This document shows, one piece after another, positions 454 to 4,593 of a stretch of DNA of 64,000 bases (position 1 is the stretch's first letter; every line of letters starts with the position of its first letter). Where the stretch lies: NCBI RefSeq assembly GCF_947568905.1, contig NC_079167.1, positions 56,420,001-56,484,000 of the forward strand, given 5' to 3'. The stretch comes from Ostrea edulis (lineage: Eukaryota). Position numbers and translations under genes: made by a program. The notes below the pieces were generated by a model, which was not told the origin of the DNA, ran no database searches, and saw only the letters and a program-made list of their open reading frames with translations.

Positions 454-3400
454 TTATGATATGTAAACATCTATGTCATATTTCAATGTATTTGTTAAGT
501 TCATGATATGCAATGTGTTATGTGGTTTCCTCGCTTCAAATGACATACTTGTATTGTTTATTTTCACACTAGTTATTTCACGGTTCACTCCATATATACT
601 GATACTCTTTATGTTTATATCATCATAACTTGTCTCGTTATGATGGAGAATTCTCATCGCGAAATGTGTCCCATTGAAGCGAAACGTAGACAGATAAATG
701 TTGTTGTTTTCAACGGTATCTATGGACTCTCCGTCATCCAGGAAAAGCGACCCCTCCGCTTTTTCGTTTTTGTCTAGGACTACGACTATTTCCATTGGGT
801 TTTTCCTGCTGACTATTGTGTTAACGCTCGGTTGCTGTGTTGGAAGGATGCTGCCCCCGCGCACAAAGACGGGAATTTCATCTCGTGGGGCGGACATAGT
901 AAGCGTTTCTTTACCGTGTTGACTTACAAGTTCACCGGTTTTAAAGTCGAACCATCGACCTTCTGGAAAATAGACCTCCACCTCGATCTTACCTGTACTA
1001 AGGACAGGGGATATCATTATTGCCGATCCCCACATGAACTGGGTGTCGATTCTACGTGATTTTAAATCTTCGGGGAAATTCTGCATTAGAGATCGAATGA
1101 CGGTACCACCCTTGGTATGCACATCGTAAAACAGAGTATACAGATAGGGCAGAAGTGAATATCTCAAGTTTAAAACTCTTCTTGCGGAATCGGCATTTGC
1201 TGGACCAAATATGGCAGGATCTTGATCTTTCATATTAATTGTATTATGATTTCTGGAAAATGTGTAAAATGCGCCAAGCTGCATCCATCTTTCACAGAGT
1301 TCTGCAGAAGGATGCCCAAAAAACCCACAGATGTCAGACCCAATATATGGTATTCCAAAGAGGTTAAATTCCAGTATTCCAATAACCGAATCGTGGACAT
1401 CTGGCCATCTGCTGTCATTATCCCCCAGCCAGTGACCAGCGTATTTTCCACTGGATGGATAAGTAGACCGCGATATAACGATTCCTCTTTTGTTTGATTT
1501 CGTAGCTTCGCGGAGTCCGTATAGAGTTGGTTCCGTTTCACTCCAGCCGTATAAACTGTGAACGTCATAATGGTTGAATTCGCCATCATTTTGTAAAGCT
1601 ACCATGCACAACGTTTTATCCGACAAGCGGGGTCCATACACACCTCTTGGTTTATAAGGCGGATCGTCTAATGCCGAAGTGGGACATTTTAGTGACCAGT
1701 ACGGTTTAACATTTTCAGGCCAGTTGAATGGCCTTTCCTCATTAGTTCCAAAGTTTGCTGGCTCGTTCATGTCTATCCATAAACCATCGAAGGGTAATTT
1801 ACGATAGTGCTCTACTATCAACTTTTTCCAATATTCTCGTGTAGTGTTCTTAAGAAAATCTGGAAAAACAGTTTTACCTTTAGGCCACACATATCCCAGC
1901 ATATCCGTTCCATTTCGCGAATCGTTAAAATGTGGCCACTTGATAAATACGTTCTGTACTTTTCCTTGTTCATAAGGTGCATAACTGGTTTCGTTACTTA
2001 TGAGCGCTGGATCAAGTATTATAATAAAATGTATGTTTTGAGCTTGCAACTCTTTTACATATCCTGAAAGATTTTTGAAATTCACTTCATCAATTGTAAA
2101 ATCCTTCCGTTCATCCATATGGTCTATATCTGCATATTGTATATCAAGAGGAATTTTATTATCGGTCATCCTTTTGGTAGCTGCCTTCAGATTGTCTAAA
2201 TTGTTATATCCATATCGACTTAATTGAAAACCTAGTGCCCAATATGGCGGTAGGTATGGTCGTCCTATTAGTTCTGTGTACTGCTGAATAACATTCTCTG
2301 GAGTTGGACCCATAAATACATAAAAGTCAAGAATCCCGCCAACTGTTCTGTAGGTCAGCGATGGACGAGGACTAAATACAACTTCCATGGCGTTACTGTT
2401 CAGCAGAAGTACTCCGTTAGAATTTCCTTGGTCGTCTTCAACACACATGTAAAATGGATGAACCCCATACAGGTTTGCATAATCCCCCCAATTCACACCA
2501 TTATCACGGGAGAACATAGGCCATCTTTTGAAGTTCATATCGTGTTTGAATGTGAAGTGGCGATTTTCACCAAAACCATACACGTAGGTAGAGGGAAGAA
2601 TTGTGGATACTTGGAGAAACTGGTTTGCAAACGTGAAACCTCCAAGAGACGTGTCAAAAATTGTCTTTTTTGTATCCTTTCTTTTAACTTTAAAGTGAAA
2701 AATAGAACTATTATCATTGGTATACTCTACTTCATATTTTTGATCTACTATAGATGGTCTAATGTTTGTATTTAAAGGAACAGGTACTTCATATCTTTTG
2801 GATACTGGGTCATCGAACTTTAATCGCACAATGTTTTCAGATATTTCCTGAATACTCAGTCTAATGTTATGTAAATCGCCTCCAAACATTGATGACCGAT
2901 TCCTCCACTGAAGGTAAACTGTGTTATTACTACCGGTATAATGCGATTCGTTTACAAATGAGTATCCATACTTAGAATTATCTACAAAACATGCTGGTAC
3001 AGAGTTTTTATTTTCTGCTTTTTGCCATATGCAGCCCCTATTTTCACACATTAACTTGTTCTGATTTTCATCATCAGTGATGTCTGGCAAGCAATCCACT
3101 CGTGACGCTTCATCCTCTTCCGGTTTGAGTTCCTCTCTAAATTCGATAGCAAAATCTTCTCGAAGAGAAATCTGCAGGTTTTTAATAGTTTTCTTTGAGT
3201 CACCTTCAATGTTAATGGCTGAATCGTTACCTTGAATGTAAGCATATCTAATCCTGTTCGATAATCCCAAAATAACTACAGTGTTTACTAATAAATTTTG
3301 TGTAAGTGAATCATTCTTCTTTTGAGTGGTCATACTTAAAACAGCGTTACTGAATTGAAATTTTGAATAGAAATATTTGGAATTCTTCAAGGTGTCAATG

Positions 3401-4593
3401 CTTTCTCCGTCGTCCCAGAAAAGTTCGCCATTTGCCGTTTGACGTCTCCCATCGTCGTCCAGAGCCACCAGCAGCGTGAATGGTTTCTGACGACTTTCGG
3501 TGGTCGTCAGAGCCGAATCTTGCTGTGGAATGATATGTCCACCTCTCACGTGAAGATGTATCTTGGAGTCTTCATCGACCTCCTGAATGAGTCTTTGCCC
3601 TCCCGAATAATGTTTGCCGGTGTAAAAGTCGTACCAATGACCGGATGGCAAGTAGAATGACAAAGTCGTTTGATTTTCATAGAGAATAGGAGATATCAGA
3701 AGCGCTGGACCCCAGAGAAACTGTGAATCTATGTCGTATGTAATTTTGTCTCTCGGAAATTCGTGATGAAGAGGCCTCATGACCGTCCCACCTTTGATAT
3801 GCGACTTATAAAACAAGGTATATAAGTAGGGAAGAAGGGAATATCGGGTTTCTAACGCTACGCGTGACGCTTCCGCGACGTCTTCTCCAAAATAGGCTGG
3901 GTCTTGAGGTTTATTACCTATCCCATTATGATTTCTGCTAAATGTATAAAATGCCCCTAGTTGCATCCATCTTTTACATAGCTGTGGGGAAGTATTTCCA
4001 AAAAACCCACAAATGTCCGCTCCAATGTACGGTATTCCAAACAAATTAAATTCCAAACTACCGATAATGGACAAATGGACGTCTGGCCACACTGCGGAAT
4101 TGTCGCCAAGCCAATGACCTGCATATTTTCCACTTCCGGGGAACGTAGAACGCGATATAACTATTCCTCTTTTGTTCGTAGCTTGTCTGAGACCCCTCAG
4201 AGTTGTTTCTGTTTGACTCCAGCCATACAAACTGTGAACATCATAGTGGTTGTACTCTTCATTGTTTCCCTGTTTCGCTACCATACATATAGTTTTATCT
4301 GATATAAGTATTTTCTTATCTTCTTTATCGTAGACAAAAGCCGCCATAGTCCTATATGGAGGATCCTCTAATGATTCACTCTCATTGCATTTTAGACTCC
4401 AATACGGTAAAGCCCCATCTGGCCAATTCCAAGGTTTTTCTAAATTGGTTCCAAAGTTGGCTGGCTCGTTCATGTCGATCCAAAGACCGTCAAAAGTCAG
4501 ATTGTTGTGATGGTTCTTGATGAGTTCTTCCCATACCTGCTTTGTTTCATTTTTAAAGAAATCTGGAAAGATTACTTTCCCTTCTGGCCATAC
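454..4593 (-). CDS. Giant terminal coding exon (4140 bp): catalytic and C-terminal half of GH31 module 2 plus all of module 3
   Basis: Acceptor TTTCTTTGTTTTAG|GTATGG at 4594/4593; open frame [12 protein letters not shown]...WIDMNEP continuous with the 1339-aa ORF to the stop at 454. Module 3 starts at the trefoil RVDCLPD (~3100). Confidence 0.95.
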   Translation of the reverse strand, partial: VWPEGKVIFPDFFKNETKQVWEELIKNHHNNLTFDGLWIDMNEPANFGTNLEKPWNWPDGALPYWSLKCNESESLEDPPYRTMAAFVYDKEDKKILISDKTICMVAKQGNNEEYNHYDVHSLYGWSQTETTLRGLRQATNKRGIVISRSTFPGSGKYAGHWLGDNSAVWPDVHLSIIGSLEFNLFGIPYIGADICGFFGNTSPQLCKRWMQLGAFYTFSRNHNGIGNKPQDPAYFGEDVAEASRVALETRYSLLPYLYTLFYKSHIKGGTVMRPLHHEFPRDKITYDIDSQFLWGPALLISPILYENQTTLSFYLPSGHWYDFYTGKHYSGGQRLIQEVDEDSKIHLHVRGGHIIPQQDSALTTTESRQKPFTLLVALDDDGRRQTANGELFWDDGESIDTLKNSKYFYSKFQFSNAVLSMTTQKKNDSLTQNLLVNTVVILGLSNRIRYAYIQGNDSAINIEGDSKKTIKNLQISLREDFAIEFREELKPEEDEASRVDCLPDITDDENQNKLMCENRGCIWQKAENKNSVPACFVDNSKYGYSFVNESHYTGSNNTVYLQWRNRSSMFGGDLHNIRLSIQEISENIVRLKFDDPVSKRYEVPVPLNTNIRPSIVDQKYEVEYTNDNSSIFHFKVKRKDTKKTIFDTSLGGFTFANQFLQVSTILPSTYVYGFGENRHFTFKHDMNFKRWPMFSRDNGVNWGDYANLYGVHPFYMCVEDDQGNSNGVLLLNSNAMEVVFSPRPSLTYRTVGGILDFYVFMGPTPENVIQQYTELIGRPYLPPYWALGFQLSRYGYNNLDNLKAATKRMTDNKIPLDIQYADIDHMDERKDFTIDEVNFKNLSGYVKELQAQNIHFIIILDPALISNETSYAPYEQGKVQNVFIKWPHFNDSRNGTDMLGYVWPKGKTVFPDFLKNTTREYWKKLIVEHYRKLPFDGLWIDMNEPANFGTNEERPFNWPENVKPYWSLKCPTSALDDPPYKPRGVYGPRLSDKTLCMVALQNDGEFNHYDVHSLYGWSETEPTLYGLREATKSNKRGIVISRSTYPSSGKYAGHWLGDNDSRWPDVHDSVIGILEFNLFGIPYIGSDICGFFGHPSAELCERWMQLGAFYTFSRNHNTINMKDQDPAIFGPANADSARRVLNLRYSLLPYLYTLFYDVHTKGGTVIRSLMQNFPEDLKSRRIDTQFMWGSAIMISPVLSTGKIEVEVYFPEGRWFDFKTGELVSQHGKETLTMSAPRDEIPVFVRGGSILPTQQPSVNTIVSRKNPMEIVVVLDKNEKAEGSLFLDDGESIDTVENNNIYLSTFRFNGTHFAMRILHHNETSYDDINIKSISIYGVNREITSVKINNTSMSFEARKPHNTLHIMNLTNTLKYDIDVYIS

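What the first reader, a model, noticed from the sequence alone, without database searches (positions are those of the whole stretch)
454..4593. A 4.14-kb intronless exon replaces ~35 expected introns at the 3' end of an otherwise intron-rich gene
Seen in sequence: module 1 has 21 introns and module 2 keeps the same intron positions through its eighth exon. From VWP (the start of the module-1 exon 9 equivalent) onward there are no introns. Missing are 13 positions in module 2, the inter-module position, and all 21 positions in module 3, about 35 by comparison with module 1. The 5' edge of the giant exon is exactly an ancestral phase-0 exon boundary. Established: recombination with a reverse-transcribed, oligo(dT)-side cDNA causes precise, contiguous, 3'-biased intron loss. 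Inference: one large cDNA gene-conversion event, or in-frame fusion of a retrocopy from a two-module paralog, built the 3' half. Retroelement RT remnants (Hero-like, Penelope-like) sit in this gene's introns, so RT activity was plausibly available.
Basis: partly seen in the sequence, partly recalled or inferred. Interest (0 to 1): 0.85.

Follow-up and report, generated by a model that had tools for sequence, protein, structure and literature searches.

The report
Ancient block intron loss, oyster glucosidase
The 4.1-kb final coding exon of an oyster three-module starch-digesting enzyme gene is real, and it formed when about 35 neighbouring introns were erased as one block, most likely by recombination with a reverse-transcribed mRNA, in the common ancestor of oysters, pearl oysters, mussels and scallops; this is an extreme example of a known process, not a recent oyster event.

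Summary
Observation confirmed. Window 454-4593 (minus strand) is one open 1379-codon exon, coding exon 31 of a 2738-aa, three-module GH31 alpha-glucosidase (maltase-glucoamylase/sucrase-isomaltase type). It encodes the C-half of module 2, a trefoil domain and all of module 3. The 30 upstream introns are all kept.

Transcript contigs lie unbroken on the exon and splice to exons 30 and 29. DNA contigs from another study carry the same exon with intron 30, so it is not an assembly artefact.

The orthologous genes of the clam Ruditapes and the limpet Patella have 35 and 36 introns in the matching region. 33 sit at the same column and phase, and 28-30 of those have no gap nearby. The identical giant exon, with the same phase-0 start, is present in Mytilus, Mizuhopecten, Pinctada and three unnamed genomic contigs.

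The loss is therefore derived, precise, contiguous and 3'-sided. It dates to the stem of Pteriomorphia, not to oysters.

Module trees place both halves of module 2 with heterodont module 2, and module 3 with module 3. The genome holds no close paralog. Retrocopy fusion from a paralog is not supported.

RT remnants in the introns were not confirmed and would be too young to matter. The scan noted a similar giant exon elsewhere in this genome (s1-287421).

The parts
454..4593 (-). Coding part of exon 31, the giant exon: 1379 codons plus stop, 50% of the 2738-aa protein
   Evidence: Open frame and AG acceptor. Transcript contigs X29 and X16 lie unbroken on 300-4590. Pfam PF01055 x2, PF21365 x2, PF13802, PF00088.
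1..453 (-). 3' UTR of the same exon; it runs off the left edge of the window
   Evidence: The X29 contig continues about 408 nt beyond window 300. AATAAA lies at window 101, -16 and -166.
3112..4593 (-). C-terminal half of module 2 (N-type GH31 module). WIDMNE nucleophile motif at 4482-4465, HWLGDN acid/base motif at 4116-4099
   Evidence: Module HMM and trees; motif positions.
457..3111 (-). Whole module 3 (C-type GH31 module), starting with a trefoil domain (3111 to about 2986). WIDMNE at 1779-1762, HWLGDN at 1434-1417
   Evidence: Closest solved structures are maltase-glucoamylase 9kz6 and 2qly and sucrase-isomaltase 3lpo.
4594..4801 (-). Intron 30 (208 nt, GT..AG, phase 0), the last retained intron. 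Its position is shared with Mytilus, Mizuhopecten, Ruditapes and Patella
   Evidence: Joint 4590>4799 in contigs X29 and X16. DNA contig X8 spans 2504-5032 including this intron. Position table.
4802..4936 (-). Exon 30 (135 nt)
   Evidence: Spliced alignment; transcript joints on both sides.
6135..6266 (-). Exon 29 (132 nt)
   Evidence: joint 4935>6134.
7051..11792 (-). Exons 23-28, the 5' part of module 2 with introns: 11792-11489, 9161-9010, 8127-7953, 7867-7771, 7513-7401, 7176-7051
12029..33082 (-). Exons 1-22: signal anchor and module 1, with 21 introns. Exon 1 is 33082-32621
   Evidence: The X29 transcript contig (7699 nt) continues from exon 31 into module 1; the offsets fit exons 13-14 and 7.

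Best explanation
This is the last exon of a membrane-anchored, three-module (N-N-C) GH31 alpha-glucosidase gene of an oyster. The ancestral mollusc gene had about 65 introns, arranged in the same pattern in each module. In the stem lineage of Pteriomorphia, a partial cDNA of the gene's own spliced mRNA reached from the poly(A) end up into the ninth exon of module 2. It recombined homologously with the chromosomal gene. That replaced the 3' half of the gene and erased all 33-36 introns downstream of the VWP boundary, in one event or very few. Intron 30 and its acceptor were left intact. The product has been kept under purifying selection ever since. It is transcribed and spliced today as a terminal exon of about 4.7 kb. 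Shown here: the exon, its splicing, the ancestral introns, the precision and contiguity of the loss, its distribution, and orthology of the content. Inferred: the cDNA intermediate, a single event, and the date.
For: Exon and junctions. Ancestral introns: Ruditapes has 35 and Patella 36 in the homologous region, with 33 shared by column and phase. Precision: 30, 29 and 28 of the 33 are gap-free within +-1, 3 and 5 columns in 8 sequences. Contiguity and 3' side: all 30 upstream positions are retained in this oyster, Mytilus, Mizuhopecten and Patella, and Ruditapes lacks only one. P for a single block under independent loss is about 3e-19. Distribution: the same exon with the same start is in Mytilus L019, Mizuhopecten L020, Pinctada L018, and genomic contigs L013 (Crassostrea kin), L014 (scallop kin) and L015/16 (mussel kin). 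L013 and L015 also carry the upstream exons (28-30 in L013) with their introns. It is absent in Ruditapes, Mercenaria and Patella. Orthology: the 5' and 3' halves of module 2 both fall with heterodont module 2, and module 3 with module 3. The retained boundary is the ancestral phase-0 acceptor. Homologous recombination predicts this; insertion of a retrocopy does not.
Against: No cDNA intermediate can be observed for so old an event. Two or three successive cDNA events on the long stem branch cannot be told apart from one. Arcida, Palaeoheterodonta (Sinanodonta) and Protobranchia (Solemya) could not be examined, so the branch is bracketed only by Venerida and Patellogastropoda. Germline expression of the gene, which heritable cDNA recombination needs, was not tested.
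Confidence: 0.82

Rival explanations
1. In-frame fusion or replacement by a 5'-truncated retrocopy, either of a two-module paralog or of the gene itself inserted nearby.
For: It would also give an intronless 3' block. Two-module MGAM-like proteins are common in other phyla.
Against: The 5' and 3' halves of module 2 have the same orthology, and module 3 is orthologous to heterodont and gastropod module 3. The only paralogs in the genome are single-module, intron-bearing and 43-52% identical. The exon starts exactly at the ancestral phase-0 acceptor shared with Ruditapes and Patella. An inserted cDNA would not bring that acceptor with it.
Confidence: 0.06
2. Many independent genomic deletions of single introns (microhomology or NHEJ type) accumulated on the pteriomorph stem.
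For: Precise single-intron deletions are documented in animals (PMC3698931). The stem branch is long.
Against: All losses form one uninterrupted 3' block while 30 of 30 upstream introns survive in three pteriomorph orders, with P about 3e-19. The background loss rate in this gene is about one intron per lineage. No pteriomorph sampled shows an intermediate state.
Confidence: 0.05
3. RNA-templated double-strand-break repair that used the spliced transcript directly, without a retroelement RT.
For: Transcript RNA can template DSB repair in human cells (PMC12065846, abstract). The outcome would look the same: precise and homologous.
Against: A tract of more than 4 kb that removes about 35 introns and ends at the 3' end of the gene fits a poly(A)-primed partial cDNA better than local repair. 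Sequence alone cannot separate the two.
Confidence: 0.06
4. The 3' half was ancestrally intronless and heterodonts and gastropods gained the introns; or the exon is an assembly artefact patched with transcript sequence.
For: None found.
Against: 33 positions and phases are shared by a clam and a limpet, and they repeat the pattern of module 1. Independent DNA contigs (X8, other studies, 75-88% of words) hold the exon together with intron 30. Four other species' genome assemblies agree.
Confidence: 0.01

Closest known systems
mRNA-mediated (reverse-transcriptase model) intron loss, with simultaneous loss of adjacent 3' introns
   Same: Precise deletions, adjacent introns lost together, 3' side of the gene, 5' introns retained. 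These are exactly the predictions listed for the RT model (PMC3652778; also PMC2395259 for Cryptococcus).
   Different: Scale and age. A block of 33-36 introns, half of a 65-intron gene, was fixed before the pteriomorph orders diverged. The mammalian cases tabulated in PMC3652778 involve a few adjacent introns.
Vertebrate maltase-glucoamylase and sucrase-isomaltase (GH31; PDB 9kz6, 2qly, 3ton, 3lpo)
   Same: Type II membrane anchor, trefoil plus GH31 modules in tandem, WIDMNE and HWLGDN catalytic motifs. Module 3 matches 9kz6 and 2qly over its whole length (E=0 and 1.6e-220).
   Different: Three modules (N-N-C) instead of two. The three-module form is shared with other molluscs and the annelid Owenia. 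Enzyme specificity is untested.
Giant intronless exon in a MAM/LDLa gene of this same genome (scan note s1-287421)
   Same: It is reported as an old loss of about 60 neighbouring introns that left one exon of more than 9 kb beside intron-rich repeats of the same block.
   Different: A different gene, said to be shared by bivalves and gastropods and therefore older. It is an unchecked AI note and was not tested here.

Membership tests
GH31 alpha-glucosidase, MGAM/SI type | GH31 TIM-barrel catalytic domain with its N- and C-terminal beta domains | tested here: met
   PF01055 (E 4e-179, two stretches), PF21365 x2 and PF13802 in the giant exon. Full-length match to MGAM and SI structures.
GH31 alpha-glucosidase, MGAM/SI type | Catalytic nucleophile motif WIDMNE and acid/base motif HWLGDN. 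Assignment of the residues rests on my own knowledge of human MGAM. | tested here: met
   Both motifs are present in modules 1, 2 and 3 (sequence).
GH31 alpha-glucosidase, MGAM/SI type | Trefoil (P-type) domain before each module and an N-terminal signal anchor | tested here: met
   PF00088 at aa 495-536 of the exon. Exon 1 encodes [25 protein letters not shown]....
GH31 alpha-glucosidase, MGAM/SI type | Alpha-glucosidase activity on maltose or starch oligomers | not testable with these tools
   Needs an enzyme assay.
RT-mediated (cDNA recombination) intron loss | The introns were present in the ancestor | tested here: met
   33 positions and phases are shared by Ruditapes and Patella, with the same pattern as module 1.
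RT-mediated (cDNA recombination) intron loss | Precise excision with no indel at the lost sites | tested here: met
   28-30 of 33 sites are gap-free in 8 sequences. One of the remaining gaps comes from an ORF call truncated at its start. Other gaps lie in a variable linker or in a single species.
RT-mediated (cDNA recombination) intron loss | Adjacent introns lost together, biased to the 3' end, with 5' introns kept | tested here: met
   All introns after position 30 are gone and all 30 before it are kept. P about 3e-19.
RT-mediated (cDNA recombination) intron loss | Germline expression of the gene at the time of the event | not tested
   Only transcript contigs of unknown tissue were seen.
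Retrocopy insertion or fusion | A donor paralog, discordant phylogeny of the intronless part, and a new splice acceptor or poly(A)/TSD remnants | tested here: not met
   No donor. Concordant trees. The acceptor is the ancestral one. Poly(A) or TSD traces would not be expected to survive this long.

The most novel reading that the evidence does not exclude
The giant exon is a single rare genomic change that defines Pteriomorphia. About 35 introns were erased in one cDNA recombination and never regained in several hundred million years. If so, it is a clean yes/no marker for disputed deep bivalve relationships, such as the placement of ark shells and pteriomorph monophyly. Together with the MAM/LDLa case noted elsewhere in this genome, it would also hint that kilobase-scale cDNA conversion was recurrent in early molluscs.
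Probability: 0.45. Interest if true: 0.55.

Novelty: new member of a known kind. Interest (0 to 1): 0.4.

Why it matters
This is an unusually clean natural test of the reverse-transcriptase model of intron loss. Within one gene, 30 introns have stayed fixed in position across bivalves and a gastropod, while the adjacent 33-36 vanish together on one branch, precisely and only on the 3' side. It shows that a cDNA conversion tract can exceed 4 kb in an animal germline. It gives bivalve systematics a discrete character. It also warns annotators that the 1339-aa ATG-initiated ORF called on short contigs is only the last exon of a 2738-aa protein. It does not point to new biochemistry or to a recent oyster-specific event.

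Tried and rejected
(1) My own idea was that the middle module is a chimera (C-type 5' half, N-type 3' half) made by the same event that added a third module. This is rejected: both halves of module 2 are N-type and orthologous to heterodont module 2, and the three-module form predates molluscs.

(2) I searched this genome for a paralog donor. It holds only single-module, intron-bearing genes at C4:75.79 Mb and C9:67.06 and 67.08 Mb, at 43-52% identity, plus distant GH31 ORFs at 30%.

(3) I looked for RT remnants in the introns. Pfam found none in 16 stop-free segments of 105-195 aa. A protein-atlas look-up of one segment gave nothing usable. Short degenerate remnants are not excluded.

The Owenia gene is not on record.

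(5) The extra pieces of contig X29 on 1265-1373 and 2074-2154 looked like a duplication. The offsets show they are the module-1 part of the same transcript cross-aligning to the homologous module-3 sequence, which is about 80% identical.

(6) Literature searches found no earlier description of this exon.
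Full report
WHAT IS THERE

On the minus strand, the frame is open from 4593 to the stop codon ending at 454. That is 1379 codons, directly preceded by a polypyrimidine tract and AG at 4594-4595.

Pfam finds two GH31 catalytic domains, two GH31 C-terminal domains, one N-terminal mutarotase-like domain and one trefoil domain in this exon. 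The second half matches solved maltase-glucoamylase and sucrase-isomaltase structures over its whole length (9kz6, E = 0; 2qly, 1.6e-220; 3lpo, 2.7e-209).

GENE MODEL

I wrote a spliced protein-to-genome aligner and ran it with the exon's own modules and with the Crassostrea virginica protein P0130 as guides.
- The gene has 31 coding exons.
- Exon 1 (33082-32621) starts with Met and a signal anchor.
- Exons 1-22 encode module 1.
- Exons 23-30 encode the first half of module 2. Their sizes and phases equal those of the first eight module-1 exons.
- Exon 31 is the giant exon.
- The protein is 2738 aa, and the giant exon encodes 1379 of them.
- All three modules keep the WIDMNE and HWLGDN motifs.

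IS THE EXON REAL AND EXPRESSED?

Twenty public runs from eight studies hold the stretch. When contigs were laid on window 300-6299:
- A 7699-nt contig of run X29 and a contig of run X16 lie unbroken on 300-4590.
- Both then jump 4590>4799 and 4935>6134, with CT..AC ends (GT..AG on the gene strand). They are spliced transcripts that join exons 31, 30 and 29.
- The X29 contig continues into module 1. The offsets of its extra pieces fit exons 13-14 and 7. One mRNA therefore carries all three modules.
- A DNA contig from an oyster-metagenome study (X8) spans 2504-5032, covering exon and intron 30 together.

The exon is not an assembly artefact. It also extends past 454 as 3' UTR and leaves the window.

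WERE THERE INTRONS?

Three-module proteins of about 2750 aa occur in many molluscs and in the annelid Owenia.

Exact gene models of the orthologs in the heterodont clam Ruditapes philippinarum (L021) and the limpet Patella vulgata (L022) reproduce the annotated proteins residue for residue. Downstream of the same VWP boundary they show 35 and 36 introns.
- 33 of these sit at the same alignment column and phase in both species.
- 30, 29 and 28 of the 33 are free of gaps within 1, 3 and 5 columns in all eight sequences compared.
- The phase pattern repeats in each module, so the introns predate the module duplications.

Upstream of the boundary, all 30 intron positions are shared by this oyster, Mytilus, Mizuhopecten and Patella. 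Ruditapes lacks one. Against that very low background, a single uninterrupted 3' block of 35 losses has a probability of about 3e-19 under independent loss.

WHEN DID IT HAPPEN?

The same exon is present in:
- Mytilus trossulus (L019, 39630-43850, aa 1368-2774);
- Mizuhopecten yessoensis (L020, 31508-35683);
- Pinctada imbricata (L018, 23458-27566; collinear but with about five frame changes, from a noisy assembly or from decay);
- unnamed genomic contigs that the trees place beside Crassostrea (L013), scallop (L014) and mussel (L015/16).

L013 and L015 also carry the upstream exons (28-30 in L013) with their introns.

All of these exons start at (V/G)WP after an AG. Ruditapes, Mercenaria (L017) and Patella have no such exon.

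By parsimony the loss happened on the stem of Pteriomorphia. The oyster-pearl oyster split alone is put at about 294 Mya (PMC10543319). The split from mussels and scallops is older (my own knowledge: early Palaeozoic). No intron has been regained in the exon in any lineage sampled.

HOW DID IT HAPPEN?

Trees of the two halves of every module, cut at the VWP column, place pteriomorph module-2 5' halves (with introns) and 3' halves (without introns) both with heterodont module 2. They place module 3 with heterodont and gastropod module 3. The intronless DNA is therefore the gene's own sequence, not a paralog's.

The genome has no two-module paralog. The three other MGAM-like loci are single-module, intron-bearing and 43-52% identical.

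The retained boundary is the ancestral acceptor of intron 30. Homologous recombination with a partial cDNA predicts this. Insertion of a retrocopy does not.

The best reading is the classical reverse-transcriptase model (PMC3652778). A poly(A)-primed, 5'-incomplete cDNA of the gene's own mRNA converted the 3' half of the gene. One event cannot be separated from a few, and the cDNA itself is inferred.

WHAT DOES NOT HOLD

- The event is not an oyster novelty.
They could not bear on so old an event anyway.
- My own chimera hypothesis for module 2 was rejected.

CONTEXT AND SCORE

I found no paper describing this exon.

An unchecked note of this scan (s1-287421) reports a still larger block loss in a MAM/LDLa gene of the same genome. 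The phenomenon may therefore be recurrent in molluscs, and this case is probably not the record.

I rate it a well-documented, extreme new member of a known kind. It has value as a clade marker and as a clean test case. Interest is 0.4.

Noticed in passing
window 31081-32107 and 19358-20031: A 32-bp x 32-copy minisatellite (93% matches) lies in intron 1. A 165-bp x 4 tandem array lies in intron 10 of the gene.
   Followed up: no
window 9372-11365: Intron 23 holds a G+C-richer, strongly skewed stretch with several overlapping open frames of 110-194 aa on both strands. None has a Pfam or atlas match. It may be a decayed mobile element.
   Followed up: partly
L017 (Mercenaria mercenaria, P0011): The annotated two-module protein is module 1 plus module 3 by phylogeny. 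There is no module 2 in the 9 kb between them. This is either a real module deletion or an assembly or annotation gap.
   Followed up: no
module trees: In several gastropods (Lymnaea, Physella, Bulinus, Littorina, Haliotis d1/d2) the modules of one protein cluster with each other rather than by position. This suggests concerted evolution or independent re-duplication of modules.
   Followed up: no
L018 23458-27566 (Pinctada imbricata): The giant exon is collinear but broken by about five frame changes, and the annotated protein is truncated to 1678 aa. The cause may be assembly indels or a decaying copy.
   Followed up: no
G000:C1:70329155-70329736 and G000:C7:63843184-63843651: Two distant GH31-like matches (30% identity) lie inside open frames of 670 and 677 aa. 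They may be intronless GH31 genes of another subfamily.
   Followed up: no
window 57698-58406: Open frames of 210 aa lie on both strands of the same stretch. One has weak beta-helix or toastrack-type Pfam hits (DUF4097, 1.8e-8). It is probably repetitive sequence.
   Followed up: no
P0001 (Logan contigs): Gene callers on short contigs report the ATG-initiated 1339-aa ORF (window 454-4473) as a stand-alone protein, with 14 member sequences. It is only part of exon 31.
   Followed up: yes
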